A DNA stretch of 64,000 bases, taken from the IMG/VR virus record IMGVR_UViG_3300028920_000022, positions 62,001 through 126,000 of that record, one strand, 5' to 3'. The notes beneath the pieces are model-generated. The model saw only the letters and a list, made by a program, of their open reading frames with translations. It was not told the DNA's origin and ran no database searches. Position 1 is the stretch's first letter. Each line of letters starts with the position of its first letter. Shown here one piece after another: positions 288 through 21,020 of this stretch. The position numbers and the translations under genes were made by a program.

Positions 288-572
288 ATGAATGATCTAA
301 AGCAGAAATTATGGTTACGGCGCCAAGCCATTCTTGCCGAATGTCCCAGGGAGGTTGCTCGGGAACAGAATACGGAGGAAATGGTTGCGTTGGACCGTGA
401 AGCAATTTCACACTGCGTGGATGATCGTATTGCTCGCGGGTGGGCGCCGGAGGATGTTTTGGCTTATGCTATCAATCTGGAGCATGTAAACCCTGTACTT
501 GAGGAAGACGTGGCACTCAAGAGAATGGCAGAAGTTTCTAAAAAGTATCCTCCGATTAAGAAGAGGGGTTGA
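288..572 (+). CDS. hypothetical protein
   Basis: ORF; TGA stop lies inside next promoter's TTGACT. Confidence 0.6.
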   Translation: MNDLKQKLWLRRQAILAECPREVAREQNTEEMVALDREAISHCVDDRIARGWAPEDVLAYAINLEHVNPVLEEDVALKRMAEVSKKYPPIKKRG

Positions 573-597
573 CTTTCATATTAAGGCTTGATATAAG
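569..597 (+). promoter_or_regulatory. sigma70 promoter TTGACT-17-TATAAG
   Basis: direct motif match; ORF-track TTG start at 569 is the -35 box. Confidence 0.75.
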
Positions 598-607
598 GAA
601 ATTAGAT

Positions 608-1075
608 ATGTACTACAAACCAATCAACCGTAAATCTAGCGCCATTAGTGCATTGCTGGACGAATCCCCGGTATATCAAAAGCAAGGGGAGGTCAATGCT
701 CGTCCTGCGAATACTGGAGAGGCAATCACTACTGAACTAAAGAGTGGTACTACGGAAACTACCAATACTGCAAAGCCCGGAGATTGGATCGTCACTAATC
801 CGAGTGGAGAGCAGTACATTATTTCCGGGGAAAAGTTTTTCAATCGTTACCAACCGACCAGTAAAACTGGAGTTTACGCTGCCAAGGGGTTCTGCCGAGC
901 AGTTCAGAATCCTTTTGGGGAACCGATTCAGATCATGGCATCTTGGGGTGAGGTGCAGGTAGGTGACGAACACTGTTTTATTGCGGACGTTTGCAACGCA
1001 GCCGGGGTAAGAGACGGAGAGCCGTACCTTATTGATGCTGATGCTTTTAGAGATACGTATCAAAAAGCGCATTGA
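608..1075 (+). CDS. PGDYG-like phage protein (start corrected to ATG 608)
   Basis: AKPGDWIVTNPSGEQY motif typical of the PGDYG/phage family. Confidence 0.55.
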   Translation: MYYKPINRKSSAISALLDESPVYQKQGEVNARPANTGEAITTELKSGTTETTNTAKPGDWIVTNPSGEQYIISGEKFFNRYQPTSKTGVYAAKGFCRAVQNPFGEPIQIMASWGEVQVGDEHCFIADVCNAAGVRDGEPYLIDADAFRDTYQKAH

Positions 1076-1100
1076 CAATTAGACTTTAATCGGCTATAAT
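1072..1100 (+). promoter_or_regulatory. perfect sigma70 promoter TTGACA-17-TATAAT; leaderless start at 1107
   Basis: exact consensus; ATG 6 nt after the -10 box; TGA in -35 is the stop of the upstream gene. Confidence 0.9.
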
Positions 1101-1106
1101 TGCTTT

Positions 1107-1541
1107 ATGGAAATCGCAGAAAGTGATAAACCGCTATTCGATGCTTTACCTAAGCTAGTACAGCGAACACAGGAGCTATTGAAGGCAGCCGGGCTTACCT
1201 GTAAGATTAGTGTCAATGATGATGCCTGGTCGGATCCTTCGATTGAACTGGATACTACTGGTATTGGTGTTTGTATTTCGTGGGATTCCGATAAGGTTAC
1301 ATATGGCGCTTTTACTACGGTTTACAATCCGGGAGTGATGTACTACCCAGATGGTAGTGGGGAACCGCCGAGCGAGGATTACAGCGAACTGGGGAAAGCC
1401 AGCACGAATCCTAACGGTCCTCTCACTGAGGCAATCAAGGCATTGATTGAGTTTCGGCTTAATGATCTGTTTGAGCACGAAGCGGACGAAGAGGAAGCCA
1501 AGTATTGGGCGGAAATGGAAAGAGTGGATTTTAATCCTTGA
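1107..1541 (+). CDS. hypothetical acidic protein
   Basis: ORF directly behind consensus promoter. Confidence 0.75.
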   Translation: MEIAESDKPLFDALPKLVQRTQELLKAAGLTCKISVNDDAWSDPSIELDTTGIGVCISWDSDKVTYGAFTTVYNPGVMYYPDGSGEPPSEDYSELGKASTNPNGPLTEAIKALIEFRLNDLFEHEADEEEAKYWAEMERVDFNP

Positions 1542-1574
1542 CAATAGTCCTTATTCCGATCTATAAGGTTGGTC

Positions 1575-1814
1575 ATGACAATTATTCTAGCAAATGGTCC
1601 CAAGGTTCCGGCACACGGCACAACGGCAGCGTGGCGGAGTGTATTGGTTCAAGAGCCTACTGAGCTGGTGGTTTATGCCGAGTATTTCAATGATACTGGA
1701 TCATACTACAGTCACGGGGTGTACTTCGACAGTGCACAATGGAAGGAAGCAAAGCGGCACTTTACGCAAGCGGTATGTCGGGACCTGAGACGAATTGATG
1801 AGATTAGGGGTTGA
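1575..1814 (+). CDS. hypothetical protein
   Basis: ATG 7 nt after TATAAG (promoter 1538-1567). Confidence 0.7.
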   Translation: MTIILANGPKVPAHGTTAAWRSVLVQEPTELVVYAEYFNDTGSYYSHGVYFDSAQWKEAKRHFTQAVCRDLRRIDEIRG

Positions 1815-1898
1815 CAAAAGGTTTAGATAGGGGTAGTATTCTCAACATCAAGTGACGGAAGTCACAGAAAGACACAACAAACAGGAGATTATCGAATT

Positions 1899-2318
1899 AT
1901 GGCACAGGTGAAGATTTTCAATCAGAGTTTCGTGAAGTTGGCTCGTTCGCGAGCTGAGCAGCTGATCGACGGTGGTGAGCGTGGCAGTGTGACTCGTCCG
2001 GCGTTGGCGGATGCGATTGCATCCGAGACGGATCAGGATGTGGCGACGGTTCGCGGGGCAATTGACGCTTGTTTGGCGGGCGGGTTGCTCAAGGGTCTGA
2101 CGACCCGACGTGGACGGAAGGGTGGCATTGTCCGCGAGGTTTCGGAGGCTGATGTTCCCGAGGCACCGGCTGCCAAGGCTGCTCCCGAGGCTGAGGAAAG
2201 CTGTGCGGATGCCATCGAGGCAGCGGCACAGGAGAACGAGGTTGACGAGCGTCCGGCGGAGGGTTGTCCTGCGGAGCAGGCTCCCGAGGCAGCTGCCGAG
2301 ACCGAAGCGACCGAGTAA
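1899..2318 (+). CDS. putative winged-helix DNA-binding protein with Ala/Glu-rich tail
   Basis: RRGRKGGI wing-like motif; promoter 1811-1839; AGGAG SD; GC-rich codons. Confidence 0.6.
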   Translation: MAQVKIFNQSFVKLARSRAEQLIDGGERGSVTRPALADAIASETDQDVATVRGAIDACLAGGLLKGLTTRRGRKGGIVREVSEADVPEAPAAKAAPEAEESCADAIEAAAQENEVDERPAEGCPAEQAPEAAAETEATE

Positions 2319-2324
2319 GGGCTG

Positions 2325-2357
2325 ATCCGCCCGGGTGGTTTTTCCACCCGGGCGGAT
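2325..2357 (+). terminator. 14-bp perfect hairpin (terminator or processing site) before tRNA-Tyr
   Basis: ATCCGCCCGGGTGG-TTTTT-CCACCCGGGCGGAT. Confidence 0.7.
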
Positions 2358-2360
2358 TCA

Positions 2361-2447
2361 GGGCAGGTATGCAAGGGGTTGAAGCAGCTAGACTGTAAAT
2401 CTAGTGCCTATGTGCTAACATCGTAGGTTCGAATCCTACCCTGCCCA
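2361..2447 (+). tRNA. tRNA-Tyr (GTA), long variable arm
   Basis: acceptor GGGCAGG/CCTGCCC; anticodon arm CTAGA-CTGTAAA-TCTAG; T-arm GTAGG-TTCGAAT-CCTAC. Confidence 0.93.
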
Positions 2448-2493
2448 CAGGTTCCAAAAGAGGATTATTTTCAACTTTCTACGGTATAGTAAC

Positions 2494-2775
2494 ATGGCAA
2501 TGACAGAAGAGAATCGATATTACATCGATCCAAAGACATTGAGCCCATTGCAGGTTCATGCAATTCAGATTTTAGCGAAGTACGGCAAACCGGCACCTAT
2601 CACATCTGGAGTGGTGCATTGTGGCAAAGCATGTTTTCGGTTGCAAACAGCAATGGAGCTGACGGAACTCGGGATCATGTATAAGACCACCACCTATCTA
2701 GGGGAAAGCTACACACTCAGCAAGGTGGGGATTGCTATTGCGTACAAGGTGGAGAAGTGGAAGGTGGGATATTGA
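2494..2775 (+). CDS. hypothetical protein
   Basis: ORF, co-directional and tightly packed. Confidence 0.6.
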   Translation: MAMTEENRYYIDPKTLSPLQVHAIQILAKYGKPAPITSGVVHCGKACFRLQTAMELTELGIMYKTTTYLGESYTLSKVGIAIAYKVEKWKVGY

Positions 2776-3017
2776 AAGTTTGGACTGACTATCCGTTGGA
2801 GGGGTTAGACGAACCGTATAGCGAAGCACCGATTCGTGAAGTCGAAGTACAGGGGTGGGACGGTAACAAGTACGCCAAAGTAAAGTTTAACAGACACACA
2901 TACACGTTCAAAGTTGGTTATTTATACACACGACCATTCAGGCTAACGTTTGACGCAGAAGAAATTCCCAACATTGATGTGAGGCAACTTCGGGTAATAG
3001 ATATTTACAAAGAATAA
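2757..3017 (+). CDS. hypothetical phage protein
   Basis: ORF overlapping upstream stop. Confidence 0.65.
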   Translation: MEGGILKVWTDYPLEGLDEPYSEAPIREVEVQGWDGNKYAKVKFNRHTYTFKVGYLYTRPFRLTFDAEEIPNIDVRQLRVIDIYKE

Positions 3018-3020
3018 ACA

Positions 3021-3455
3021 ATGAGAAAAGCCTACTCATATATCTGCACGCACTGTGGATGTCCCGATACCAGAGACGAGCCCGACTACTGCGATCCTTG
3101 TCCCAGGTGCAACAGTCGCATGGAATGTGTCGGCGTTGACCATGCGGCTATGGATCGTGAGCTGGACGCGCAATTTATACGCCACCGAGACCGGGTTTAT
3201 CAGCTGTCCAAGATCGATGGGCTGAGCGACGAAGCCGCCAGGATGGTTTCACTGAGTGCCATTGGCGAGAACGGAATGTTCTGGGTCTCGGGCACAGATC
3301 GGGACATTCTGTGCAGAGGCATTACAGAATGCAAATATTGCAAAAAGCCGTTGCCCGAGAAAGTGTTTTACGACCGCGCACCCTTCTGTAGTGAGGAGTG
3401 TGCCACCGAAGACATAGACGCCTACGCCGATTTCCTGCTCGAACACCAGGGGTAA
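3021..3455 (+). CDS. Cys-rich zinc-finger protein
   Basis: CxxC pairs (CTHC, CPRC, CKYC) and FCSEEC. Confidence 0.65.
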   Translation: MRKAYSYICTHCGCPDTRDEPDYCDPCPRCNSRMECVGVDHAAMDRELDAQFIRHRDRVYQLSKIDGLSDEAARMVSLSAIGENGMFWVSGTDRDILCRGITECKYCKKPLPEKVFYDRAPFCSEECATEDIDAYADFLLEHQG

Positions 3456-3532
3456 GAAACCTGCTCCACACGTAGGAGAACCTGGAAGCTGGGGCAGATT
3501 TCGATTTTATGGATATTTACAAGGAATAAACA

Positions 3533-3844
3533 ATGAGTTTCGAGGGATACGTACAGCGGTTGTGTAAAAACGGACATTACTCCAGTGGCGATGTTTGGAC
3601 ACATCGAGCCGGAGCACGATGCCTGGAGCGGAGATGTCGGGCTAGTATTGTCTGGACGAATCTGGTTGACGAGACCAACGGTGCTCCGCAAGGCAAGATT
3701 GATATGGAGCAATTTTTAGTAACTCCGGTAAAGAGTGAAACCTGCCCCACGTGTGGGCACACGCAACAATCTGAGCCCGCTATCTATCGAATTCCCACAC
3801 CAGAAGAGACAGAAAAAGCCAGGCAATACTTTGATGAGGATTAA
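3533..3844 (+). CDS. zinc-ribbon hypothetical protein
   Basis: CKNGH, CPTCGH; AAGGA SD. Confidence 0.65.
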   Translation: MSFEGYVQRLCKNGHYSSGDVWTHRAGARCLERRCRASIVWTNLVDETNGAPQGKIDMEQFLVTPVKSETCPTCGHTQQSEPAIYRIPTPEETEKARQYFDED

Positions 3845-3893
3845 TATACAAAAAGCTTGACCTTGATTCTAAAGAGTGATATAAGGGAACACA

Positions 3894-4415
3894 ATGAAAA
3901 ACGCACAAGAGCGAGCTTTTAGGTTACTGCTATATTATGCCTCAAAGGATAATAATACTGCCGAGGTGACGGTACACCAAGACGGGTCTATTGTTTTCGG
4001 TAACAATACCTGGATTGCTCCAGAGGGTGTGGAGGCAGAACTGAAAACACTACCAGAAGCGCCAATCTCGGATTCGCAGGTAGCAAAGCGGGTAGGGGAG
4101 CTAGTATTGCACGCCGGGTTGTACGACTCTACAGTATACGATTCTGCAGTAATAGCGAAGCGAATCTGTGGCAAAGGAAGTCCTCTTGTCGGGCTAGTGG
4201 ATATAATGCTGTGTAATGCGAAAAGCCGAAAGTGGGCGGAGGGGGTTATGGCGCCTTCGGTCAAGGAGCAACTGGACGAATGTGTTCGGGAGCTTCAGGA
4301 TTTCACGGAGAATGCTGAGTATCCGATACGGAATAATCTTAATCTTCGCAAACTTAACAAATTAGTATCACTAATTCAATCTGGCAAAGTTGGGGTGTTG
4401 CCGGAAAATGATTGA
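3894..4415 (+). CDS. hypothetical protein
   Basis: behind promoter TTGACC-17-TATAAG (3857-3885). Confidence 0.7.
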   Translation: MKNAQERAFRLLLYYASKDNNTAEVTVHQDGSIVFGNNTWIAPEGVEAELKTLPEAPISDSQVAKRVGELVLHAGLYDSTVYDSAVIAKRICGKGSPLVGLVDIMLCNAKSRKWAEGVMAPSVKEQLDECVRELQDFTENAEYPIRNNLNLRKLNKLVSLIQSGKVGVLPEND

Positions 4416-4431
4416 CAACCAGGGATAAAAG

Positions 4432-4713
4432 ATGACAAAAAATACTGCTCTAGCTCTTATTGTTCAAAAGGTAACTGACCTTCAGGGGTGCAAGGTATCT
4501 GAACTAATTGCCGCATTAGCGGACGATGAAACCAGCAGGGAAGTGGTTATCAATTTTGATATTCCCGAATTAATTGAGTTTCTTGTCCAAAACAAAATGG
4601 TAGTCGAAGTGGCTTATGTTCTGCCCAATATGGGCTATCGTATTAAATCATTTTTGCTACCCACACAATGTAAAGCACATATTTACGGGGATTATGGCGG
4701 ACTAGATGGTTGA
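4432..4713 (+). CDS. hypothetical protein
   Basis: ORF; stop inside TTGACA at 4710. Confidence 0.65.
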   Translation: MTKNTALALIVQKVTDLQGCKVSELIAALADDETSREVVINFDIPELIEFLVQNKMVVEVAYVLPNMGYRIKSFLLPTQCKAHIYGDYGGLDG

Positions 4714-4744
4714 CAATCTAGTGTATTAGAGGTATAAACGGACT

Positions 4745-5521
4745 ATGAGACAAGGACATGACAACGGGCTAATTACCACCAAAGGCAAGAAGGGCAAGAA
4801 ATCTCCGAAGCTTTTGGGAATCAACCTCGGAGCCGACTTTTGTGCTGAGCACGAGTGGGGAATTAAGGACATTAAGAATGCCTTGGGGCTGGATTCTTCC
4901 AAGGTGGGAGTGGAAGCACGAAGGGTTAGGAATATTCCCACAGAAGGGCACGAACGGCTAGAGTGGGTTCAGACCAAGGAATTTTTCGGTTTTTGCCTGA
5001 TGACGAATTGTTATTCTGGTCACATCAACACGGACTATCTATTACGAAGCGTTCGTTTTTACAACAGTTCGTTGTGGACTGCGTGGGATCAAGGTTCATT
5101 CGGAGTTTTTTCCAACGATCCAGCTATCATTGAACAATTGCAGGAGATTTACGATAATCTTCGAAATAAGAATGCGGTAGTTTGGTTGGGTGGCGGCGGA
5201 GTATTTCAGAATGCTGGGTTGTGCATTGGCATTACTGACCGGCTACCTCCGGACGTAGCGAAGCAATGGAAGGAAGCCGATGAGGATCGGAATGCTGCAC
5301 AGAAGTACATGGAGAAGTCAGGAATTGAAAAGATTCTCCGGGATGCTGGGAAAGAATATTTTGCTTTGAGTCCTCGAAAGATGAGTGACGGTTCTTTCAA
5401 GTTCTGGTTGAACCCGGATAATCAAAGGGACTACGATAGCAATTGGTTTACTTTGGAGGAGCTGAAGTTGTGGGCTCAGGACAAGGGTCCGGTTATTCTC
5501 AAGAAAAAGAGGCGATATTAA
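4745..5521 (+). CDS. hypothetical phage protein, leaderless
   Basis: 258-aa ORF; ATG 6 nt after TATAAA of promoter 4710-4738. Confidence 0.8.
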   Translation: MRQGHDNGLITTKGKKGKKSPKLLGINLGADFCAEHEWGIKDIKNALGLDSSKVGVEARRVRNIPTEGHERLEWVQTKEFFGFCLMTNCYSGHINTDYLLRSVRFYNSSLWTAWDQGSFGVFSNDPAIIEQLQEIYDNLRNKNAVVWLGGGGVFQNAGLCIGITDRLPPDVAKQWKEADEDRNAAQKYMEKSGIEKILRDAGKEYFALSPRKMSDGSFKFWLNPDNQRDYDSNWFTLEELKLWAQDKGPVILKKKRRY

Positions 5522-5522
5522 A

Positions 5523-5762: not shown

Positions 5763-5766
5763 ACCA

Positions 5767-6126
5767 ATGGCTGACTGGTACAAGTTTAATCTAGTTTTTA
5801 TCGAACCTCCAGTTGAGGGCAATCTTGCTGCGGCTAACAAAGCTTTGCAGGACGAAGATTATGATGCTCCTGTAATTTCCGCGGAAGGGTGTACGGAAGC
5901 GTTGTGGCGGAGCCCACAGCTAAGCGAAGGGAAGTTGATTAAACTATTTAACAGTTACGGATTGGAGTGTAAATTTCAACTGCACTGGAATTATGAGGAG
6001 GATCGTTTTCCTGGTTGTCATGACTGGGTGTATGTATCTGATTTTGTAGAGGTAAAGGAAAAGATTCTCAAATTGTCAGAAAAAGAGCGAGCGAGTTTGC
6101 GGTGGTGGATTGAAGGAAACTGTTGA
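5767..6126 (+). CDS. hypothetical protein
   Basis: ORF. Confidence 0.65.
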   Translation: MADWYKFNLVFIEPPVEGNLAAANKALQDEDYDAPVISAEGCTEALWRSPQLSEGKLIKLFNSYGLECKFQLHWNYEEDRFPGCHDWVYVSDFVEVKEKILKLSEKERASLRWWIEGNC

Positions 6127-6157
6127 CAGCCGGAATAATTGGCGGTATAAAGGAACC

Positions 6158-6391
6158 ATGAAAAACGAAATTGGTTTTGTAGTCAACGGCAGCGTGTATA
6201 TCACCGAAGTGCAAGTTTTGCAGAGGGATGCTACGGACCTTGTGTTCCTGCAAACTGATTTGCCAAACAACATTGTGGGTGGTGGTCCTAATGTCACGAT
6301 GAAGTTTGAGTTGAGGCAGAATACCGCCTGTGAATGGTTGAAAGAAAACCTGGGAATTGCGCCGGATCGGGTGATTGATAGTGGAAGCTAA
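6158..6391 (+). CDS. hypothetical protein (start corrected, leaderless)
   Basis: ATG 6 nt after TATAAG of promoter 6123-6151. Confidence 0.7.
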   Translation: MKNEIGFVVNGSVYITEVQVLQRDATDLVFLQTDLPNNIVGGGPNVTMKFELRQNTACEWLKENLGIAPDRVIDSGS

Positions 6392-6771: not shown

Positions 6772-6801
6772 TCCTGCTTGTGTTTGGTTGGAAGTTTGAC
6801 A

Positions 6802-7206: not shown

Positions 7207-7429
7207 AGCCTGGATAGACGAATCCAATTTTTCTGGTAATTTTGTGATTGTCGATGATGAGGCGGACATGGGTGATCTAATTGATCATTTAGTACGCACA
7301 TCTTACAATGGAGCCATGGGAAGCACCGGGCTAACCGTTGCACATACTAAAAGAATTATTGCAAGGCTGAACCGGGCGGAAATTAATTGGAATTGTTATC
7401 CTGAGCATTTAAGACCATTGAAAGCTTGA
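7184..7429 (+). pseudogene. C-terminal fragment of a HAD-family (HAD_SAK_2-like) protein
   Basis: RGEEIKAW..FVIVDD..DM...LVRT...GLT pattern present, N-terminal DxD motif absent. Confidence 0.5.
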
Positions 7430-7464
7430 CAAGGTTTCGCAATTGATGGTATAAGAGTTGAGTA

Positions 7465-7677
7465 ATGGTTAAGGAAAGAAAAGCTCAGTGGCGGCAGGAC
7501 ACGCCGCAACAACAGATGGTAGCTTTAACGCAAGCAATTGCTGGTTATGCTGTGTGGTTTGTTGAGGAGCCGGAAGCCTTAAAACCCGAGAACGTACAGA
7601 GAGTATTTCAAAACATAAACGAAAAGTGTGAGGATCTTTTCGAACTTTCCAATTGGATGGATTCACAATGGCAATGA
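7465..7677 (+). CDS. hypothetical protein
   Basis: behind promoter 7426-7455. Confidence 0.65.
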   Translation: MVKERKAQWRQDTPQQQMVALTQAIAGYAVWFVEEPEALKPENVQRVFQNINEKCEDLFELSNWMDSQWQ

Positions 7678-8887: not shown

Positions 8888-9181
8888 ATGAGTAGCACAC
8901 CGCCTCCACCCTGTGCCTGGTGTAAAAACTGGGGTAAAGGAAGTCCTAATTGTGATCACATCAACGAATGTCATGATGATAATGATTGGGAAAGGCTTAA
9001 TCCGGTAGCGAACTGGCAATGGGTTCGGTTGGTATGGTTCGTGAACGAGGTTGACAGTTCTGGCATGCATCCGAACGACAAATCGCACAATATTGCTGAC
9101 AAGCTCAGGACGATGATTGCTAATGGTTACAAACCTATTGTGGATAATTCACCAACGCTTGACAAGCTAGAAAGAGATTGA
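8888..9181 (+). CDS. hypothetical protein
   Basis: ORF with CxxC. Confidence 0.55.
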   Translation: MSSTPPPPCAWCKNWGKGSPNCDHINECHDDNDWERLNPVANWQWVRLVWFVNEVDSSGMHPNDKSHNIADKLRTMIANGYKPIVDNSPTLDKLERD

Positions 9182-9193
9182 TATAACATCCGG

Positions 9194-10807: not shown

Positions 10808-11116
10808 GAGCGGAGTAGCAGTTCAGATTGAGGAGCGCGGGAAGGTTGTTTGGGAGCATTATTTCCGAGACAATGGTACTGCGGCGGGGATAGCTCAGGC
10901 ATATCGTTTAGCTAACACGCTGGCTACACAACTTCGGCAGGATGAGAGAAAGATTAATTAATGCTTACTCCTGAACAAAAACAATTGGCAGCTCAGTGGT
11001 TGGTGGAAAAACTACGTGAAAGAAGCGATACGGCTGCGCAAAAGAAATTGTTGACGAACGACCGGAGCCAAAATAAGAACTTGACTTAGTTTCTTATTGA
11101 GTATATAGTTGCTGTC

Positions 11117-11440
11117 ATGGAAAACAAGGAACCAGCAGAATACAAGCGTTTGACCGACAAGCATCCCACCATGCAAAAGCTGCAAAAGTTGTGGGAACTG
11201 GCAGACGAACTGGGTATTCACATCGATTTTTACGGTCACAGAACCGTTGTGACTGACGATCAGTATCCTGATCGGATTTACGACATGATCGATCTTGATT
11301 CACCCGATGCTGCTATTTCAGAATTTCCTTATGCTTTTGAGGTTGCCCTGCGGTTTGAGAACAGGTTTAGCCCAACTGCATTTTGTCAAGGATTCAGATA
11401 TTGCTGCTGTAAGTACATATGTGGAGTCGTATCATATTGA
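11117..11440 (+). CDS. hypothetical protein, leaderless
   Basis: ATG 7 nt after TATAGT of promoter 11081-11109. Confidence 0.7.
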   Translation: MENKEPAEYKRLTDKHPTMQKLQKLWELADELGIHIDFYGHRTVVTDDQYPDRIYDMIDLDSPDAAISEFPYAFEVALRFENRFSPTAFCQGFRYCCCKYICGVVSY

Positions 11441-12440: not shown

Positions 12441-12665
12441 ATGAAATTATCTGAGATTATAGGCTGGGTTGGAATGGTACTCGTGTTGACCATGTACGGG
12501 TTAGCAGCGAACGGGATCCTGTTAGCCACCAGTTTTGTGTTTAATATTTTTAATATGTTTGGAGCCGTTTTTCTTGGTATATCTGCTTTTGCCACTAAGA
12601 ACTGGTCTATAGTTGCTTTAAATATAGTTTGGTGTGTATTAGCAATTACATCATTTTTAAAGTAG
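12441..12665 (+). CDS. small multi-TM membrane protein (CBU_0592-like)
   Basis: IIGW.G..LVL..Y; N..GA; W..VALN.VW. Confidence 0.55.
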   Translation: MKLSEIIGWVGMVLVLTMYGLAANGILLATSFVFNIFNMFGAVFLGISAFATKNWSIVALNIVWCVLAITSFLK

Positions 12666-12702
12666 TTGACGACACTTTAGTGTTTCTGTTATAAAGGTTC
12701 CC

Positions 12703-13011
12703 ATGAAGAACAAGAAAGAAAAAGTGGTACGAGCGGACTATCACGACAATGGTGACAAAGACAATTCGCTTGCCGGTTGGGCGGAAGTCATTCGTCAGCA
12801 AAGCGAGGAAATGCGCAAACAAGAACAGCAGCGCAAAGCAAAGCTGAACGAAAAACTTGCTGTCATTGAGGGTAAGGGGTTGGAGTTCGGAGATCGTGTT
12901 TTGGCTATTTTTGATCTTTATCGCGAGCGCTACATGATGTCTGGAGAGTTTTGTGAAAAGGTATTTAAGTGGGCTGCAGAGCAGCGTGGTATTGGAGAAG
13001 AGGATTATTGA
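12703..13011 (+). CDS. hypothetical protein, leaderless
   Basis: promoter 12666-12695. Confidence 0.7.
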   Translation: MKNKKEKVVRADYHDNGDKDNSLAGWAEVIRQQSEEMRKQEQQRKAKLNEKLAVIEGKGLEFGDRVLAIFDLYRERYMMSGEFCEKVFKWAAEQRGIGEEDY

Positions 13012-13768: not shown

Positions 13769-14050
13769 ATGATTCCCGAATTGCATAATTGGTTTACAAA
13801 ACGCAGCGTATGGAAAGCGCCGGAGGATAACCCAATCCGAGTGGCAGGAGAAGTTTGGAATCATCCTGGTTTTCCCAACGGGCATAAGATTCAAACTTCC
13901 TCGCCAACCAGTTTCGATCCGCAGTCAAGGCTTTTGACTACAATTAGCGGATCGGTATATAGGTTGGAAAAACCAGATCCCGAATGGATCAAGTGGATGA
14001 GAGAACAAGGAATAGAATTCGATCCTGAAAATCCGATCAGGTTTACTTGA
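13769..14050 (+). CDS. hypothetical phage protein
   Basis: G.V..HP.F.NG..I.TS...T.SGSVY.L pattern. Confidence 0.7.
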   Translation: MIPELHNWFTKRSVWKAPEDNPIRVAGEVWNHPGFPNGHKIQTSSPTSFDPQSRLLTTISGSVYRLEKPDPEWIKWMREQGIEFDPENPIRFT

Positions 14051-14081
14051 CAGCCGCCTGCTTTTATGAGATAAAGGGTGT

Positions 14082-14669
14082 ATGAGTTGTTACATTAATG
14101 CACCAGCAACCAAACTACTAGCCACTCATTGCGCCTGTTGTGGGCGCCTATTGGTGGATTCTAAAAGTGTAGAGTGTGGAGTGGGACCGGAGTGTCGAAA
14201 AAAGCATGGTTATGGTGAAGCCCAGCATCTTCCCAATTGGGAAAAATTGCTAACGGTTCTGCTAATGCCATCGCCACCAGAGAGTCTAACCGAAGCTATT
14301 GCGATTCAAGACGCTCATCGCGCTGCTAATGTTTTGGTTTACCACATTGCTGCCCAACAATCGGGAGAATATGTTGAGCAATACGTGGAGGCGTTGGCGG
14401 CATTGGGTTATGTTAAACTAGCTCGACGAATGGTACAAAGACTAAATGGAATAATTGTTGATCAAGATGGGGCAACATTAGTGGTGCGTGGTCCCTATAA
14501 TCCTCAATTGGGAATTCGTTGGATTCCGGGGGCAGCATATAGCCGAAAAAGAGGTATTCGGTTTACTGCTCCAGCAGAATATAATAAATTGGTCTGGGAG
14601 GCGCTAAAGAATGCTTATAGAACAGGAACGTTGGTTGCTGGTTCTAAAGGGGTGAGAAAACTGGCTTGA
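14082..14669 (+). CDS. DUF6011-like zinc-finger protein, leaderless
   Basis: CACCGR.L.D..S...G.GPEC; promoter 14047-14075. Confidence 0.7.
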   Translation: MSCYINAPATKLLATHCACCGRLLVDSKSVECGVGPECRKKHGYGEAQHLPNWEKLLTVLLMPSPPESLTEAIAIQDAHRAANVLVYHIAAQQSGEYVEQYVEALAALGYVKLARRMVQRLNGIIVDQDGATLVVRGPYNPQLGIRWIPGAAYSRKRGIRFTAPAEYNKLVWEALKNAYRTGTLVAGSKGVRKLA

Positions 14670-14701
14670 CATTACAACGCGCATTATGGTATAAAGGGTT
14701 T

Positions 14702-14959
14702 ATGATTAAGCTGGAAAAAGAAATTCTCAAGGAAGCTCAGCATTGGGTTCCGAGAGCCAAGGTGCAGCAGATCCGATCTGCGCTTTTGAAGCTGACTCAT
14801 GGAGGGAAGCGGGCGAGGATTTTGGCGGTAGCCGAGGCTGCCGATTGTTCGCAGGCAATGATTGAGTTTTGCTATCAGGCGAATCTTCTCAAAGGATATA
14901 CACACCAATACGGTCGGCATGGCGGATTCACTAGAAAGCTGCATTTGGTTCTGGTATAG
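14702..14959 (+). CDS. putative winged-helix protein (start corrected, leaderless)
   Basis: YGRHGGF wing-like motif; promoter 14666-14695. Confidence 0.55.
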   Translation: MIKLEKEILKEAQHWVPRAKVQQIRSALLKLTHGGKRARILAVAEAADCSQAMIEFCYQANLLKGYTHQYGRHGGFTRKLHLVLV

Positions 14960-14972
14960 CAAAGGTAGAAAT

Positions 14973-15158: not shown

Positions 15159-15247
15159 TTGTCCACATTGTGGCAGGTCTGATTGTGCGGTATATGCAGA
15201 AGACGGTTTGATTACTGCGATTTGCAGTGAGACTGGAAAGGTACGCA

Positions 15248-15502: not shown

Positions 15503-15848
15503 TGATTAAATGGTTCATTTTTTTCGTGCTGCGGTGCATTTGGTTTGCCTATTTGGTGCTGGAGTGTTATCGTGGCGACTGGGAATGGGCTCTATTCCTA
15601 TTCGTAGCAAGCATTGTGGTGTTGAAACTGTTCGGGTTTCCCAAGGATTAAAACGAGGATGACGATGAATACTGAACAAAAGCTAGAGATTGCGGTAAAA
15701 GCCTTGAAAAGAATTTGTTATCCTATCGAGGCTGACCAATTTTGTGACGAAGAATGGAAGCTTTGGCACAAGCAATATGAGGATGGTAGCCTAGAAGGTG
15801 AGGACGTCATTGCCTACCGGGCGCTTAAGGAACTTGGAGAATTTTAAC

Positions 15849-16145
15849 ATGGACGATCAAATTGGAAAGAAACACGTTTTCTCTTTTAACCCCAATGATA
15901 ATAATGGGGAGCAACTTATTCTAGTTACGAAATTTACTGATAATGGGGATGGTTATCCTGATGGCATTTATGTGACGCAGGAGTTGCGCTTTTTCAGCCA
16001 TTGCAACGCAGCAACTTTCTATCTGACAGGAGTCACTTTGAATCCTGAAAACTTGCGAGAGTTGGCTAACCAGTTGGAATCAGAAGAGATCAAGGCGGCG
16101 CTCGCGTACTCAGGCGAAGAAAGCTTGACACCCCAGAACAAGTAA
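15849..16145 (+). CDS. hypothetical protein
   Basis: GGAG SD; ORF. Confidence 0.65.
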   Translation: MDDQIGKKHVFSFNPNDNNGEQLILVTKFTDNGDGYPDGIYVTQELRFFSHCNAATFYLTGVTLNPENLRELANQLESEEIKAALAYSGEESLTPQNK

Positions 16146-16157
16146 GGTATAAGGGAC

Positions 16158-16270
16158 TTACAATAACAGAGCAGAGCCCGCCGGACGGTGCCAACGACAC
16201 GCAGCGGGTTTCCAGAAAACAAACTGGTGGCACAGTTGTTTGAAGGAAGGTTCGCCATGCTGCTCTTTGA
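16158..16270 (+). ncRNA. candidate structured ncRNA (own promoter 16125-16153)
   Basis: closing stem AGAGCAG/CTGCTCT, hairpins and pseudoknot GTGCCA/TGGCAC; no ORF. Confidence 0.5.
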
Positions 16271-16321
16271 TAAATATAACAGATAAGATAACAAGATAAA
16301 ACTTAAAATAACACTTAAATA

Positions 16322-16350
16322 AGAGCGCCATCTGCTGGGCAGGTGGCGCT
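16322..16350 (+). terminator. strong hairpin GAGCGCCATCTGC-TGG-GCAGGTGGCGCTC
   Basis: 13-bp stem between two promoter units. Confidence 0.65.
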
Positions 16351-16408
16351 CGTCTATTGTGGCGAAGAAAAAACTTGACATACCGGAATGGTTTCGGTTA
16401 TACTGTAG

Positions 16409-16662
16409 GAAAGAAACTAAGATTGATTAAGAGTTGGTGATTCCTGTTAGTTGAGTGTCAAGATTCACGCCCCTTTTAGGAATCTGCCAATAGGACAGAT
16501 TGGATTGGAGTTAATTCTCGCGATTCCATGTGGTGCGACGGTAGCCACGGCAGAAATGTCAAGCTGTCCACTTTTCCTTGACGTAGGCACGGCGGAAGTG
16601 ATAGTGTAGACAGACCATGGGAAAAGCCTCTTTGAGGCGTGCGGACGTGAAGAACATGGGTT
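16409..16662 (+). ncRNA. candidate ~250-nt structured ncRNA (promoter 16375-16404)
   Basis: multiple stems, no ORF longer than 17 codons noticed, bounded by promoter and terminator. Confidence 0.55.
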
Positions 16663-16693
16663 GAAACGCCGGGATTTTCCCGGCGTTTCTTTT
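16663..16693 (+). terminator. rho-independent terminator
   Basis: GAAACGCCGGGA-TTT-TCCCGGCGTTTC followed by TTTT. Confidence 0.85.
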
Positions 16694-16731
16694 ATGTTGA
16701 CTATCCAGTTTATTCGGTGTATAAGAAGAAC

Positions 16732-17271
16732 ATGGAATTGAAATTATCGGTTACAGCACCATCACCAAAGGTGGCAAAATCTGGAACTAGGGTAAAAACG
16801 AAGAAATCCAACTTCGATTTGTTCAAGTTTATGACCACCAAACGCCCTTGGCTGTATGTCAAACGGTTGGATGTTTTGGGTACTGGCTCTAGTCGTATCG
16901 TTTATATCGTTAATAACAAGTTGGTTATTAAGATGGCGTATGCTGGTTACGAATGTAGGGGAAACATTCTACCTATTGGTGCTGGCAAAACGCAAAATAA
17001 AGTCGAAGCCATGGTTTCTGCGGACCCTATGAGCAATGGTTTGGTTGCCAAGGTGTACGCGGCGGCGCCCGACTACCGCTGGATAATTGTAGAAAATTGT
17101 GATGAAGGCAGTGATCAGGATGATGATGATTTCGATTGGAAAGCCTTTGAAAAACTGAGCCAAAAGTATGATTTAAGGGACGATGATGATGTTCTTGGTA
17201 TAAACTCTGATAAGAAGCTAGTAATGCTTGACTATGGGCTCGATGGTGATGTATATAATGACTACTACTAG
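16732..17271 (+). CDS. minimal protein-kinase-fold protein, leaderless
   Basis: LGTGSSRIVY, VIK, helix-C E, LDYG (DFG-like); promoter 16697-16725. Confidence 0.65.
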   Translation: MELKLSVTAPSPKVAKSGTRVKTKKSNFDLFKFMTTKRPWLYVKRLDVLGTGSSRIVYIVNNKLVIKMAYAGYECRGNILPIGAGKTQNKVEAMVSADPMSNGLVAKVYAAAPDYRWIIVENCDEGSDQDDDDFDWKAFEKLSQKYDLRDDDDVLGINSDKKLVMLDYGLDGDVYNDYY

Positions 17272-17280
17272 GAGGTAGAC

Positions 17281-17457
17281 ATGCAAGGTAAGCTTAGGCA
17301 GTGGCGGGAAATGAAGCGAGAAGAAGCCAAGGAGCGTCAAAACGCCTGGGCAGTCCAGACTCCACAGCAACAGATCAAAGAGTTGGATCGGCGGCTTGGT
17401 AAGGGGTTGGGAGCCAAGAAGCAACGGGCAAAGATTGCTCGGCAAATGGAGGATTAG
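17281..17457 (+). CDS. small basic protein (58 aa, absent from ORF track)
   Basis: AGGAGG SD; MQGKLRQWREMKREEAKERQ... Confidence 0.65.
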   Translation: MQGKLRQWREMKREEAKERQNAWAVQTPQQQIKELDRRLGKGLGAKKQRAKIARQMED

Positions 17458-17715
17458 ATGGTATTCCCGGACGAACCGACCTGCCGTGAGTGTGGCGAAC
17501 AACTGTACCCACAAAATGATTACTGTATGAGCTGCGGTACATCGTTCGAAGAGGCTGCTCGTTTTGCAGCATCAGAAGCGTACCACGACCACCCTAGCAA
17601 TCCGTCTAGTTGTGCAGCGTACGCAGAGCACACCGGACGCAATGAACGCGAGTGCCCGTGCGAGCACGCCTGGTCGAAGTACCTGCCCGGCTGGGACGAG
17701 GACGGGGAGAAGTAA
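17458..17715 (+). CDS. zinc-ribbon protein
   Basis: CRECG...YCMSCG. Confidence 0.6.
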   Translation: MVFPDEPTCRECGEQLYPQNDYCMSCGTSFEEAARFAASEAYHDHPSNPSSCAAYAEHTGRNERECPCEHAWSKYLPGWDEDGEK

Positions 17716-17879
17716 TGGGACTCATTCTTATATGTTTGGCAGTAATAATTGCATATACGTCCGGTGGGCTCATTGGCAAAGGGGATATGGATACCGGTGA
17801 TATTGGTTACTGGGCAACGTCTGGGTTGTGTGCTATACTCGTGGTTGTAGGTTATTTCTGGAATAGGAAGTAGTTAATA

Positions 17880-17963
17880 CCGGGAGTGCTGGAACAGGAA
17901 TACAGAACTGGCTTAAAACCAGTCGGTGGAAACACCATAAGGGTTCGAATCCCTTCTCCCGGA
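17880..17963 (+). tRNA. tRNA-Leu (TAA)
   Basis: CCGGGAG/CTCCCGG; ACTGG-CTTAAAA-CCAGT; long variable arm; AAGGG-TTCGAAT-CCCTT. Confidence 0.93.
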
Positions 17964-17981
17964 CCGAACGAGAAAATTATT

Positions 17982-18533
17982 ATGTCACTTCGCTATCTTA
18001 ACGAATTTTCACAAACCAAATGTGCTGCAGATCTTTTAGCGCTCAAACTCTTTCCCAATGTTAAAGAGATTAGCGAAAGTTTTGGAGCATATAACGCTGT
18101 GCGTCGGCATTTGTGGAAAACATTTCAACCCCACAATGCCGATTGTCATATGGTGGCGGTAGGGGACGGAGTATCTCCGAGAACCGCTGCTACGTTTGCT
18201 TTTAGGACTGCCTGGCAATGTCACAGTGTGGATCCGAAACTGCGTGGAGGAAAATGGTACAATCCAATTCGACGCAATAAACTACAGCGCGTGACCCTCT
18301 GGACCATGCCGGTCGAAAAGATGGTGAGCTGGAAACCTGTAGAACACTTGGTAATCGTAGCAGTACATTCGCATGCAGATTTACGGGAGGCTGTTCGAGC
18401 ATTGCCTGCCAAGCATGTTGGAGTGGTGGCGATTGAGTGTTGTGTTCCGCAAGAACTTGACCGGGCTCCGGACATTCAATATGAGGATTTTGGTATACTT
18501 AGCCCTAAACGCACAGTGAAGGTTTGGAAATGA
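17982..18533 (+). CDS. putative Rossmann/SAM-methyltransferase-like protein (start corrected)
   Basis: VAVGDGVSPRTAA..AF...W...SVDP motif. Confidence 0.45.
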   Translation: MSLRYLNEFSQTKCAADLLALKLFPNVKEISESFGAYNAVRRHLWKTFQPHNADCHMVAVGDGVSPRTAATFAFRTAWQCHSVDPKLRGGKWYNPIRRNKLQRVTLWTMPVEKMVSWKPVEHLVIVAVHSHADLREAVRALPAKHVGVVAIECCVPQELDRAPDIQYEDFGILSPKRTVKVWK

Positions 18534-19391
18534 TTGATTTGGGGCAAGGATTAAGAGATATTTGTGAAGCGGGAGGCGTTGCGCTTATTTGTGAGCTTAA
18601 TGACGCCGGTTCTGTGCTGGTTACTTGGGATCGTAAAAATACTATTACAATTTGGCAGCCAGCGATTCCTTTTGGTCCTTCAGATTGTTGGAAAGAGGAA
18701 AAAAGTGTAAGAATAGATGGACGTTATCCTGGCGGTATGACTTTTAAAGAGGCGGATCATCATGCGCGTGTGGAGTTGAATAGGTATGTCAAGAATATCT
18801 CATTCGTGCCAAATATGTCGAATAACAAAGAGGATATATAATAATGTGTTTATTAGATTCCACGAAGATGTTTTAAACATTGTATATGAGTATGGGTTTG
18901 ATCCTGAAGCCATTGAGAGAATTAAGGCTCTAGGTTATCTTTTTTATAAAAACCAAGCAGGTAACTATAAATTTTTCGATAAACGTATGGCGCGAGTAGT
19001 AATGCAGCAACTTATACGAACAGTCAGCGGAACGTGTTCAACAGAAAGAAAAAACCCACAAAAAGACCTTGAGCACTTTTGTAATCTGGATAATCATCTG
19101 GAGATTAATCCGGAGAACTTGAAACAATGGTTGCTTAGTTATTACGGTGATGAGGGTTTTATTCTTATACCATTACAATATAGAAATAAAATGTTGAGAT
19201 TGTTGGATGTCGAATAACGAATTAGAAACAACCAGAGCCCAACTAGATCGTATGCGCGCACAGCTGCATTCGTACAGGGTGGCTTTGGTTTGGATGGCGA
19301 ATGAAAAACATTGCCGCCATAATAAAGATGGTGGTGTTTGCCTAGCTTGTTATGCTAGAATGCTGTTATTGCCAACTAAGGAAGAATAATT

Positions 19392-19892
19392 ATGCGTATC
19401 AAATGTGACAAATGTGGAAAAGAACACGCATGTGGGCATGAACAAACTTGTAGGATTTGTGGGACGCATGTGTGCACTAGCTGTTCCTCCAGAATTAAAT
19501 TCGAGGATTACAAAAGTAAAAAGAGGGTTTGTAACGATTGTGCGCATACGTACCGTAATGGCGATGAATCCGCAGAATGTCGTCGCTGGCGTAAATTGGT
19601 AGAAATGATGTTACCATCGGTGTGTAATCCGATTGTGGAAAGCATTGCTCAGAAAGCGGTTTCTCGTCGACAAGCGCCTACCACATCTTCTTTGAAAACA
19701 GGTGGAGAACCAAAGTTTTCTATGCTAATTCCTGTGATGGATACAGAGAAATTGCGGCAGGATCTTGGTATGCTAGATGAGCCGACCATTGATGGTGTGC
19801 TTAATTTTTGTCATAACGATCCATATTATGCCCAATCGTTGGAACGAAGGTATGGAAAACCCCTTTCAGAATTGAGAGAAATTGCCAGATGA
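19392..19892 (+). CDS. Cys-rich (FYVE-like) zinc-finger protein
   Basis: several CxxC pairs. Confidence 0.55.
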   Translation: MRIKCDKCGKEHACGHEQTCRICGTHVCTSCSSRIKFEDYKSKKRVCNDCAHTYRNGDESAECRRWRKLVEMMLPSVCNPIVESIAQKAVSRRQAPTTSSLKTGGEPKFSMLIPVMDTEKLRQDLGMLDEPTIDGVLNFCHNDPYYAQSLERRYGKPLSELREIAR

Positions 19893-20163
19893 CTTGGAAT
19901 GAATTAATTACCACTCGTGACCCGCGCTGTCCTGGTTGCGGGCACGTCCACCCACGAAAGAAAACTTGGGGAACCTTTGTGGTAAAGACAGATTATTGTC
20001 GGCGGGATCATAAGTATCTCACTAATAAAAAAGGCGAACCAAGTCATTGCAAATGGGTTGGTTATTTGACGGAAGAAGATTATTTGAAAGGTTTGCCTAG
20101 AAACGGTCTTGATAATACTGCGGAGGACTAAAATAGGTGTCGTTTTTGCGCAGGAGATACACA

Positions 20164-20526
20164 ATGAGGAATAAGATTGAAAAACTATTGGATGTTAGCA
20201 ATGCTTTGGCTGTTAACAAAAAGATCGTTCAAAAACAATTTGAACCCTTGTCTGAGTTTGTCGGTAAAGAAAAGCTAGAATCAATTCAAAAAAACTTGAT
20301 CGAGAAAAGTAAAAAAACTCTAATCGAAAATTATCAAAAATATATGCCAGAAGCTTCGTTAGATGCCTTACTGGCGTTCTACGATACTCCCGAGGGAAAA
20401 CAGGCAGCAGAAGCTTACGAGATAATTGCGTTAGAAAACTTTAATAGCAGTTTTCAACATGGAAAAGAAATGGCTGAAGAAATGTTGGCGGAAATCATGC
20501 CTCCGGATATTAGCCAGACCAATTGA
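20164..20526 (+). CDS. DUF2059-like protein
   Basis: Y.KY....L..L.AFY.TPEGK. Confidence 0.55.
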   Translation: MRNKIEKLLDVSNALAVNKKIVQKQFEPLSEFVGKEKLESIQKNLIEKSKKTLIENYQKYMPEASLDALLAFYDTPEGKQAAEAYEIIALENFNSSFQHGKEMAEEMLAEIMPPDISQTN

Positions 20527-21020
20527 CAGATGGTTGCTGGCTGTGTTATATAGCTGGCAATGGTTGATTTCGACGAAGCCCAAGCTACTAAAATTATTAC
20601 AGATTTTTCGCGCCGGTATTGTTCTTCGGACCCGGCAACCCAGGAAACCCTACAAAAGAACTGTTCTAACAGGCTTTAATTAAAACTATTGCATTTCCTT
20701 TCATTCAACCGCTAGGTGTGTTATTGTTTGCTTGGTTGTTAACGGTGGTTATTTAAAATGGATATTGACAGCGGACTAATTGCTCTACATACTGGCGAGG
20801 AACAATACCTGAAGTCCAGAGGGTGGACGCCCGCCCTTTATCACACTAAAGGTGGGGATATTATTAGGGTATGGTCTCTGGATGGTCTTGCGTTTACTCA
20901 CCAAGCGGCTATGCGTAAGCAGAAGCGGCTTGACCTGGGAAAGTGGCAGGAAATGGATCGGGTGGCAGCTGAGCTGCTACCTACTAAATATGGGATTACT
21001 AAAGATCCTTTGGTGGAATA

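What the first reader, a model, noticed from the sequence alone, without database searches (positions are those of the whole stretch)
569..20528. Promoter -35 box supplies the upstream gene's stop codon: modular promoter-gene cassettes
Seen: at 10 junctions (TGA ending at 572, 1075, 1541, 1814, 4415, 4713, 7429, 14050, 14669, 20526) the ORF ends on the TGA inside TTGAC(A/T). At most of these a -10 box follows 17-18 nt later; 4412 lacks a clear -10. Established: T4-type phages such as RB49 shuffle early genes through repeated promoter cassettes. Inference: genes here are exchanged as promoter-plus-ORF units with junctions at the -35 hexamer, so each incoming cassette terminates its neighbour's ORF. 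There is no long shared repeat, only the hexamer.
Basis: partly seen in the sequence, partly recalled or inferred. Interest (0 to 1): 0.68.

Follow-up and report, generated by a model that had tools for sequence, protein, structure and literature searches.

The report
Early promoters that end neighbouring genes
In the early-gene region of a 459-kb phage from marine sediment, about thirty host-type promoters are packed so tightly between small genes that the promoter's TTGACA box supplies the stop codon of the gene before it and the next gene's ATG sits at the predicted transcript start; the pattern is real and non-random, and is a very compact variant of known phage early-promoter arrays.

Summary
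All ten ORFs end on the TGA inside TTGAC(A/T). An eleventh does so at 6126, and more lie upstream of the window. The window is part of a 458,729-bp virus record.

- **Enrichment:** in the early region 22 of 48 TGA stops sit in TTGACN, against 7 of 317 elsewhere (p = 2e-16).
- **Frame bias:** of 20 ORFs that reach a promoter, 16 stop on its -35 TGA (p = 2.5e-5 against 1/3).
the next ATG lies 6-7 nt after the -10 in 18 of 30 promoters. These genes are therefore predicted to be leaderless, which fixes the intergenic gap at 31 nt.
- **Relatives:** three related metagenomic lineages (50-78% protein identity) share the layout and have shuffled gene order.
- **Against the cassette model as stated:** orthologues keep the -35 stop while the downstream gene differs, C-termini are not truncated, and two gene-sized indels sit at the promoter/ATG edge rather than at the -35.
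- **For promoter-bounded recombination:** in one relative a 37-nt promoter occurs three times with different flanks.

The promoters have no stem-loop, so they are not PeSLs. Verdict: a new variant of a known kind. The cassette interpretation is partly supported.

The parts
569..610 (+). Promoter: -35 TTGACT 569-574, -10 TATAAG 592-597, ATG 608. TGA 570-572 is the stop of ORF 288-572.
   Evidence: a marsh-metagenome variant has 14 nt fewer here
1072..1109 (+). Promoter: -35 TTGACA, spacer 17, -10 TATAAT 1095-1100, ATG 1107 (6 nt after the -10). TGA 1073-1075 stops ORF 608-1075, a PGDYG-domain protein.
1538..1577 (+). Promoter: -35 TTGACA, spacer 18, -10 TATAAG 1562-1567, ATG 1575. TGA 1539-1541 stops ORF 1107-1541.
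   Evidence: its orthologue in lineage B also ends on a -35 TGA
1811..1901 (+). Weaker promoter: -35 TTGACA, -10 TAGTAT 1834-1839, with a 59-nt leader and an AGGAG ribosome site before ATG 1899. TGA 1812-1814 stops ORF 1575-1814.
3857..3896 (+). Promoter: -35 TTGACC, -10 TATAAG 3880-3885, ATG 3894. The upstream ORF has its own TAA 12 nt before the -35.
4412..4434 (+). TTGACA without a -10. TGA 4413-4415 stops ORF 3894-4415, and ATG 4432 follows after 16 nt. It may be a promoter relic or a chance hexamer.
4710..4747 (+). Promoter: -35 TTGACA, spacer 17, -10 TATAAA 4733-4738, ATG 4745. TGA 4711-4713 stops ORF 4432-4713. The gap is 31 nt.
6123..6160 (+). TGA 6124-6126 stops ORF 5767-6126.
   Evidence: conserved in a marsh-metagenome contig
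7426..7467 (+). Promoter: -35 TTGACA, spacer 18, -10 TATAAG 7450-7455, ATG 7465. TGA 7427-7429 stops ORF 7184-7429. In relatives the same promoter and leader sit directly before the ArdC-like gene.
9159..9187 (+). Promoter read through in another frame. ORF 8888-9181 stops on the TGA that is also the extended -10, just before TATAAC.
11081..11119 (+). Promoter: -35 TTGACT, -10 TATAGT, ATG 11117. The upstream ORF reads through the -35 and stops on the TAG directly after it (11087-11089).
12663..12705 (+). Promoter: -35 TTGACG, spacer 18, -10 TATAAA, ATG 12703. The upstream stop TAG 12663-12665 abuts the -35.
14047..14084 (+). Promoter: -35 TTGACA, spacer 17, -10 GATAAA 14070-14075, ATG 14082. 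TGA 14048-14050 stops ORF 13769-14050.
14666..14704 (+). Promoter: -35 TTGACA, spacer 18, -10 TATAAA 14690-14695, ATG 14702. TGA 14667-14669 stops the DUF6011 gene 14082-14669.
   Evidence: the orthologue in lineage A keeps the -35 stop with a different downstream gene
16125..16351 (+). Promoter (-10 TATAAG 16148-16153) followed by about 190 nt without an ORF and a strong hairpin at 16323-16351. ORF 15849-16145 stops on a TAA inside the spacer.
16375..16689 (+). Promoter (-10 TATACT 16399-16404) followed by about 280 nt without an ORF and a terminator at 16663-16689.
16697..16734 (+). Promoter: -35 TTGACT, spacer 17, -10 TATAAG, ATG 16732 (6 nt after the -10).
20523..20562 (+). Promoter: -35 TTGACA, spacer 18, -10 TATATA 20547-20552, ATG 20560 (39-codon ORF). 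TGA 20524-20526 stops ORF 20164-20526.
29402..29443 (+). Last promoter of the array: -35 TTGACA, spacer 17, -10 TATAAA, ATG 29441. The upstream stop TAG 29402-29404 abuts the -35.

Best explanation
**Where it lies.** The span is part of the host-polymerase-dependent early region of a 459-kb phage. The region runs from about genome 50 kb to 91 kb, that is window -12 kb to +29 kb.

**What it is.** About thirty near-consensus sigma-70-type promoters each abut their gene. The consensus is an A-rich stretch, TTGACA, a mid-spacer A/T motif, G at -14, TATAA(A/G) and a G-rich discriminator. The ATG lies 6-7 nt after the -10, at the predicted transcript start, so these genes are predicted to make leaderless mRNAs (inferred, not shown).

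**Why the stop falls in the -35.** The leaderless layout fixes the promoter 35 nt before the ATG. The promoter is therefore the whole intergenic region, and the upstream ORF runs on until the first in-frame stop. In one frame that stop is the invariant TGA of TTGACA, which gives the recurring 31-nt gap.

**Why that frame dominates (inferred).** I attribute the excess, 16 of 20, to two processes together. The first is selection against ORFs that run through the promoter into the next gene, which would add junk residues or fuse the genes. The second is inheritance: once a gene ends on a -35 TGA it keeps that end through later exchanges at or inside promoters. Orthologues in related lineages show this, keeping the stop while downstream neighbours change.

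**Role in shuffling.** Promoters act as joints in gene-by-gene shuffling. Breaks occur at the 5' edge of the -35, at the ATG edge, or within the promoter. The units exchanged are not consistently promoter-plus-downstream-ORF.
For: - **Promoter array:** 38 on the + strand against 4 on the - strand, with 31 of the 38 in genome 50-100 kb. Consensus logo.
- **Leaderless spacing:** the ATG is 6-7 nt after the -10 in 18 of 30 promoters (p = 5e-20). All 19 promoter-proximal starts are ATG, and only 1 of 19 has GGAG or GAGG upstream.
- **Start codons confirmed:** orthologues align from Met1 with the same spacing.
- **Stop enrichment and frame bias:**
- **Alternative compact solutions also occur:** TAG abutting the -35 three times, stops in the spacer or extended -10, and an ATGA overlap. 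Promoters carry stops in the other frames in 18 of 22 and 15 of 22 cases.
- **Same layout in relatives:** lineages A and B and contigs L153 and L154.
- **Inheritance:** the -35 stop is kept in orthologues of w-2596, w1107 and w14082 while the downstream genes differ.
- **No truncation:** C-termini differ by 8 residues or fewer.
- **Recombination:** a triplicated 37-nt promoter with different flanks in L149.
Against: - No transcript 5' ends are available, because no RNA run holds this DNA. Leaderless expression is therefore a prediction.
- Stops exist in all three frames of most promoters, so avoiding run-through does not by itself explain the preference for the first frame.
- An unrelated phage contig with the same leaderless spacing (L141) has no ORF of 40 aa or more ending on the -35 TGA at its five promoters; stops lie before or after the hexamer. 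Compaction therefore does not force the overlap.
- Relatives are only 50-78% identical in protein, so breakpoints are resolved to gene boundaries and not to nucleotides, except in L149.
- The two recent indels seen between near-identical lineage B contigs are not at promoters.
Confidence: 0.55

Rival explanations
1. Promoter-plus-downstream-ORF cassettes are the mobile units. They insert with the junction at the -35 hexamer, and the incoming hexamer supplies the stop for whatever gene lies upstream.
For: - In L149 the copies at 122 and 5417 of one promoter share sequence from the -35 onward, including the downstream gene, but differ immediately upstream. At 5417 the upstream 133-aa gene stops on that -35 TGA.
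- In L153 the ArdC-like gene ends on a -35 TGA followed by a different gene, whereas this phage and L149 use their own TAA at the same position.
- Upstream promoters are kept with orthologues of w-9475, w-2596, w1107 and w14082.
- The mechanism has precedent in RB49 and phi1 (PMC2839356).
Against: - The -35 stop stays with the upstream gene when the downstream gene changes. The promoter after the DUF6011 gene resembles its counterpart in lineage A although the genes behind it differ.
- Upstream promoters are present in one lineage and absent in another for about six orthologues.
- Two gene-sized indels lie between promoter and ATG.
- This genome has no repeated promoter sequences or paralogous cassettes.
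- Random-frame insertion would give one third in frame, so selection is still required.
Confidence: 0.3
2. Pure compaction with no role in recombination. Deletions shrink intergenic DNA until the promoter is reached, and the -35 TGA is simply the last stop that cannot be lost.
For: - The genome is 93% coding by my calls.
- Many neighbouring genes overlap by 1-23 nt.
- A full range of near-minimal junctions is seen, with offsets -15, -9, -3, +1, +8, +18, +20, +23 and +36.
- C-terminal tails after the last conserved block are short and variable.
Against: - Moving from an abutting stop to the overlapping TGA saves only 4 nt, which is weak selection.
- It does not explain the shuffled gene order or the triplicated promoter with different flanks.
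- The equally compact contig L141 does not use the overlap.
Confidence: 0.2
3. Translational coupling. The fixed 31-nt distance from UGA to the next AUG, together with the G-rich TATAAGG stretch acting as a weak ribosome site, lets ribosomes that terminate on read-through transcripts re-initiate on the next gene. On this view the in-frame stop position is itself selected.
For: - The gap is exactly 31 nt at eight junctions and 32-35 nt at six more.
- G is frequent at the two positions after the -10: 14 of 24 and 13 of 24.
- Few terminators lie between the promoters.
Against: - The 31-nt gap follows automatically from a 17-nt spacer and a 6-nt discriminator.
- The G-rich discriminator can equally be explained by contact with sigma region 1.2 (my knowledge, not tested here).
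- No expression data exist.
Confidence: 0.1

Closest known systems
PeSL cassettes (promoter-early stem-loops) of T4-type phages RB49/phi1, PST and nt-1 (PMC2839356, PMC4122927)
   Same: Near-consensus sigma-70-type early promoters are densely repeated in an ORFan-rich hyperplastic region on one strand. There is an A/T-rich stretch before the -35. Promoters are associated with gene-by-gene insertion, deletion and replacement between relatives.
   Different: - There is no stem-loop or terminator component (mean fold z = -0.26).
- In PeSLs the upstream stop lies in the AT-rich region before the -35. Here it is inside the -35.
- The promoters of this genome share only the consensus, not long repeats.
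- The ATG follows at 6-7 nt, so there is no leader or ribosome site.
Leaderless mRNAs such as lambda cI from PRM (my knowledge; general statements in PMC5312081 and PMC8244752)
   Same: The start codon is at or within a few nt of the predicted transcript start. It is always AUG, and there is no Shine-Dalgarno sequence.
   Different: Known phage cases are single genes. Here about twenty consecutive early genes share the layout. The giant phages with mapped 5' ends have no leaderless early transcripts: AR9 has 26-491-nt UTRs and phiKZ has none.
Overlapping stop/start signals of compact phage genomes, such as ATGA overlaps in T4 (my knowledge)
   Same: Bases are shared between the end of one gene and the expression signals of the next.
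   Different: Here the shared element is a transcription signal, the -35 hexamer, rather than the next start codon.

Membership tests
Sigma-70-type (housekeeping) bacterial promoter | -35 hexamer close to TTGACA and -10 hexamer close to TATAAT | tested here: met
   TTGAC is invariant and TATAA is present in 21-24 of 24 aligned sites.
Sigma-70-type (housekeeping) bacterial promoter | Spacer of 17 +/- 1 nt | tested here: met
   All 30 sites have 17 or 18 nt.
Sigma-70-type (housekeeping) bacterial promoter | Non-random placement: co-oriented with and directly upstream of genes | tested here: met
   38 on the + strand against 4 on the - strand, and 2-7 in shuffles. 31 of the 38 lie in one 50-kb region.
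Sigma-70-type (housekeeping) bacterial promoter | Transcription initiates there with host RNA polymerase | not testable with these tools
   No RNA run holds this DNA.
PeSL cassette | Strong sigma-70-like early promoter in a hyperplastic, ORFan-rich region | tested here: met
   Most flanking genes have no family match, and gene order differs between relatives.
PeSL cassette | Stable stem-loop (terminator) within or next to the promoter | tested here: not met
   Fold energies of 30 promoter regions against shuffles give a mean z of -0.26; only 2 are below -2.
PeSL cassette | Sequence conserved enough between copies for homologous recombination | tested here: not met
   Mean spacer identity within this genome is 0.33, and the longest shared stretch is about 22 nt. 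One 37-nt promoter is triplicated in relative L149.
PeSL cassette | Indels between close relatives are bounded by the cassettes | tested here: inconclusive
   Supporting cases: the L149 triplication, two indels at the promoter/ATG edge, and the L153 junction. Two recent indels in lineage B are elsewhere. The roughly 93%-identical marsh relative exists only as 151-nt contigs.
Leaderless mRNA gene | Start codon at the transcript 5' end, predicted from a 6-7-nt distance to the -10 | tested here: met
   18 of 30 promoters have the ATG at 6-7 nt, and 22 of 30 at 6-10 nt.
Leaderless mRNA gene | AUG only, and no Shine-Dalgarno sequence | tested here: met
   19 of 19 starts are ATG, and 1 of 19 has GGAG or GAGG upstream.
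Leaderless mRNA gene | Mapped 5' end coincides with the AUG | not testable with these tools
   No transcriptome is available.

The most novel reading that the evidence does not exclude
The roughly 35-bp promoter may be an evolved self-contained expression joint. It would terminate an incoming ORF in any frame, through the -35 TGA, the mid-spacer TAA or extended -10 TGA, and an ATGA at the start. It would then express whatever ORF follows without a ribosome-binding site. That would let a whole clade of huge phages swap early genes freely. The phage's own IF3, IF1 and S21 homologues could then shut off or retune translation of these leaderless early messages as a temporal switch.
Probability: 0.15. 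Interest if true: 0.8.

Novelty: new variant of a known kind. Interest (0 to 1): 0.55.

Why it matters
- **Coding economy:** one 35-bp element appears to carry the stop of one gene, a full promoter and the start of the next.
- **Annotation:** ribosome-site-based gene callers misplace starts in such regions. One deposited gene call in L148 starts inside the -35.
- **Finding early genes:** the layout gives a sequence-only way to pick out immediate-early genes of uncultivated huge phages. These are likely anti-defence and takeover functions; an ArdC-like anti-restriction gene lies in the array.
- **Host clue:** the promoters indicate a host with canonical -35/-10 recognition.
- **A testable link:** if leaderless expression is confirmed, early-gene translation can be tested against the translation factors that huge phages encode.

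Tried and rejected
- **Close relatives:** megablast of the span against cultured phages found nothing. RIIA by tblastn reached only 26% identity. IMG/VR scans with RIIA and the DUF6011 protein found no relative.
- **Distant relatives:** relatives of the 258-aa protein in IMG/VR were too distant (38% or less) and lack the promoter layout.
- **Built-in promoter scan:** it did not separate signal from shuffles at its lenient threshold (33 found against 31.1 expected), so I built a position-weight scan.
- **Paralogous cassettes:** none within the genome.
- **Stem-loops:** none in the promoters.
- **Concerted evolution of promoters within genomes:** only weak (spacer identity 0.33-0.42 within lineages against 0.35-0.39 between).
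- **Truncation of upstream proteins by the -35 stop:** rejected.
- **Birth of promoters inside the 3' ends of upstream genes:** rejected for the cases I could compare, because orthologues without the promoter are not longer.
- **Recent indels between near-identical lineage B contigs:** not at promoters.
- **Rfam:** no family for the two ORF-free units.
- **Reads:** The reads call used 6,000 letters.

Full report
**Context.** The window is bases 62,001-126,000 of a 458,729-bp virus record. The only run that holds the whole stretch is a marine sediment metagenome, which may be its source. The window encodes RIIA and RIIB homologues, an RNA ligase, DNA ligases and an ArdC-like anti-restriction protein. 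No cultured phage or IMG/VR record is close to it. Nearly all genes in the window are on the + strand. The first 20 kb has 42-51% G+C, against 36-43% further on.

**The observation.** All ten coordinates are correct. I found an eleventh case at 6126 and several more upstream of the window. Nine of the ten have a -10 hexamer 17-18 nt after the -35, and 4412 has none.

The enrichment is strong. With my own gene calls, 22 of 48 TGA stops in the early region lie in TTGACN, against 7 of 317 in the rest of the genome (Fisher p = 2e-16). In the window the figures are 11 of 21 before 20,600 and 0 of 40 after it. TGA is not used more often in the early region.

**The promoters.** A position-weight scan finds 38 sites on the + strand, 4 on the - strand and 2-7 in shuffles. 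Thirty-one of the 38 lie in genome 50-100 kb. The aligned sites show the following features:
- an A-rich stretch 4-7 nt before the -35;
- invariant TTGAC;
- a mid-spacer A/T motif;
- G at -14 in 19 of 24 sites;
- TATAA followed by A or G;
- two G-rich positions after the -10.

The ATG of the next gene lies 6 nt (12 sites) or 7 nt (6 sites) after the -10 hexamer. That is 18 of 30 promoters, with p = 5e-20 for chance ATGs. This is the normal distance from the -10 to the transcript start, so these genes are predicted to be leaderless. Several observations fit:
- All 19 promoter-proximal starts are ATG, and only one has GGAG or GAGG upstream.
- Promoters with longer leaders do carry a ribosome site, for example 1811.
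- Orthologues align from Met1 with the same spacing.

The layout fixes the -35 at 35 nt before the ATG. That explains the recurring 31-nt gap from stop to start, which is seen at eight junctions.

**Frame bias.** Twenty-six promoters have an adjacent upstream gene. In 16 the gene stops on the -35 TGA. In 4 it reads on in another frame and stops at +8, +18, +20 or +23. In 6 it stops 3-15 nt before the hexamer, three of them with a TAG abutting it. Sixteen of the 20 ORFs that reach the hexamer is far above one third (p = 2.5e-5).

The promoters also tend to hold stops in the other two frames, in 18 of 22 and 15 of 22 cases. These come from the mid-spacer TAA, a TGA that doubles as the extended -10, and ATGA at the start.

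Three unrelated phage records with sigma-70 promoter arrays serve as controls. None shows the excess: the -35 TGA ends an ORF of 35 aa or more at 4 of 11, 0 of 5 and 3 of 12 promoters.

**Relatives.** The DUF6011 protein (14082-14669) has homologues of 60-67% identity on metagenomic contigs. Fetching them gave lineage A (L144-L147) and lineage B (L148-L151). The ArdC-like protein gave L153 (78% identity) and L154 (71%). All share the layout of TTGACA, 17 nt, TATAA(A/G), about 6 nt and ATG, with many -35 stops. Gene order is thoroughly shuffled between lineages.

**Tests of the cassette model.**

*In its favour:*
- In L149 one 37-nt promoter occurs at 122, 5417 and 5993. Copies 122 and 5993 share at least the 60 nt compared upstream and the promoter, then diverge just before the ATG. 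Copies 122 and 5417 differ up to the -35 and are alike from there on, into the downstream gene. At 5417 the upstream gene stops on the -35 TGA.
- In L153 the ArdC-like gene ends on a -35 TGA before an unrelated gene, whereas this phage and L149 use their own TAA at the same position.

*Against it as stated:*
- Orthologues of w-2596, w1107 and w14082 keep the -35 stop in two lineages each while the downstream gene differs.
- The promoter after the DUF6011 gene resembles its counterpart in lineage A although different genes follow it.
- Upstream promoters are conserved for about four orthologues and variable for about six.
- A 138-aa gene in lineage A, and w7465 in this phage, sit exactly between a conserved promoter plus leader and the gene that the promoter serves in other lineages.
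- Upstream proteins are not truncated. The PGDYG domain is complete, and orthologue C-termini differ by 8 residues or fewer after the last conserved block.
- This genome has no paralogous cassettes and no long promoter repeats.

**Population data.** Two marsh metagenomes hold a relative of roughly 90-97% identity, but only as contigs of 151-203 nt. Two of these contigs run straight across a promoter junction: one spans the promoter at 569, and another spans the promoter at 6123 with three differences. The contig over 569 keeps the TTGACT stop but lacks 14 nt between 587 and 607. By my reading of the listed changes, that removes the -10 and leaves an AGGAGG ribosome site before the ATG. This suggests promoter presence varies locally while the stop-bearing hexamer stays. 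It is a single low-depth contig.

**Conclusion.** The promoters differ from PeSLs. They have no stem-loop, and the upstream stop lies inside the -35 rather than before it. I conclude that this is a leaderless early-promoter array in which the promoter is the entire intergenic region and its -35 TGA is the favoured, heritable stop of the upstream gene. Promoters act as joints of gene shuffling at either edge. The relative weight of selection for short tails and of inheritance through promoter-bounded recombination is not resolved.

Noticed in passing
window 16125-16351 and 16375-16689: Two consensus promoters are each followed by about 190 and 280 nt without an ORF of 40 aa or more, and then by a strong hairpin. 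They may be early small RNAs. No Rfam family matches.
   Followed up: partly
genome (G000:C1) 408117-408308, 192982-193224 and 180543-180701, outside the window: The phage encodes homologues of translation initiation factor IF1, IF3 (C-terminal domain) and ribosomal protein S21, all above the Pfam cut-offs. A lineage B relative has an IF1-like gene 6 kb from its early array. They may bear on leaderless translation.
   Followed up: no
window 2361-2448, 17880-17965, 22372-22452, 46016-46087: Four tRNA genes (Tyr-GTA, Leu-TAA, Lys-TTT, Ile-TAT) lie among the early genes.
   Followed up: no
window 587-607: A marsh-metagenome contig keeps the TTGACT stop at 569 but lacks 14 nt. By my reading this replaces the -10 with an AGGAGG ribosome site. 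It would be a promoter/ribosome-site polymorphism, seen at about 2x depth.
   Followed up: partly
window 1-20000 against 22000-64000: The early region has 42-51% G+C and the rest of the window 36-43%. The related early regions have 42-52%.
   Followed up: no
L149:158-661 and 5452-5985: A duplicated gene in lineage B has many internal repeats offset by multiples of 9 nt. The two copies are 87% identical and lie 5.3 kb apart behind the same promoter.
   Followed up: partly
L140 (G001:C1:1-18000) and L141 (G002): One unrelated IMG/VR phage has 11 nearly identical 28-nt sigma-70 promoters within 15 kb. Another has five promoters with the same ATG-at-6-nt spacing, but none of their upstream ORFs of 40 aa or more ends on the -35 TGA.
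   Followed up: partly
L151:4608-4700 against L148:3090-3180: A 2-nt insertion in one lineage B variant shifts the last codons of the w1107 orthologue. It then misses the -35 TGA and reads 37 nt further, into the next gene.
   Followed up: yes
window 7668-8537: An ArdC-like anti-restriction gene lies in the array. Its L149 orthologue carries the ArdcN and MPTase-PolyVal domains. It has its own leaderless-type promoter in relatives L153 and L154 but not here.
   Followed up: partly
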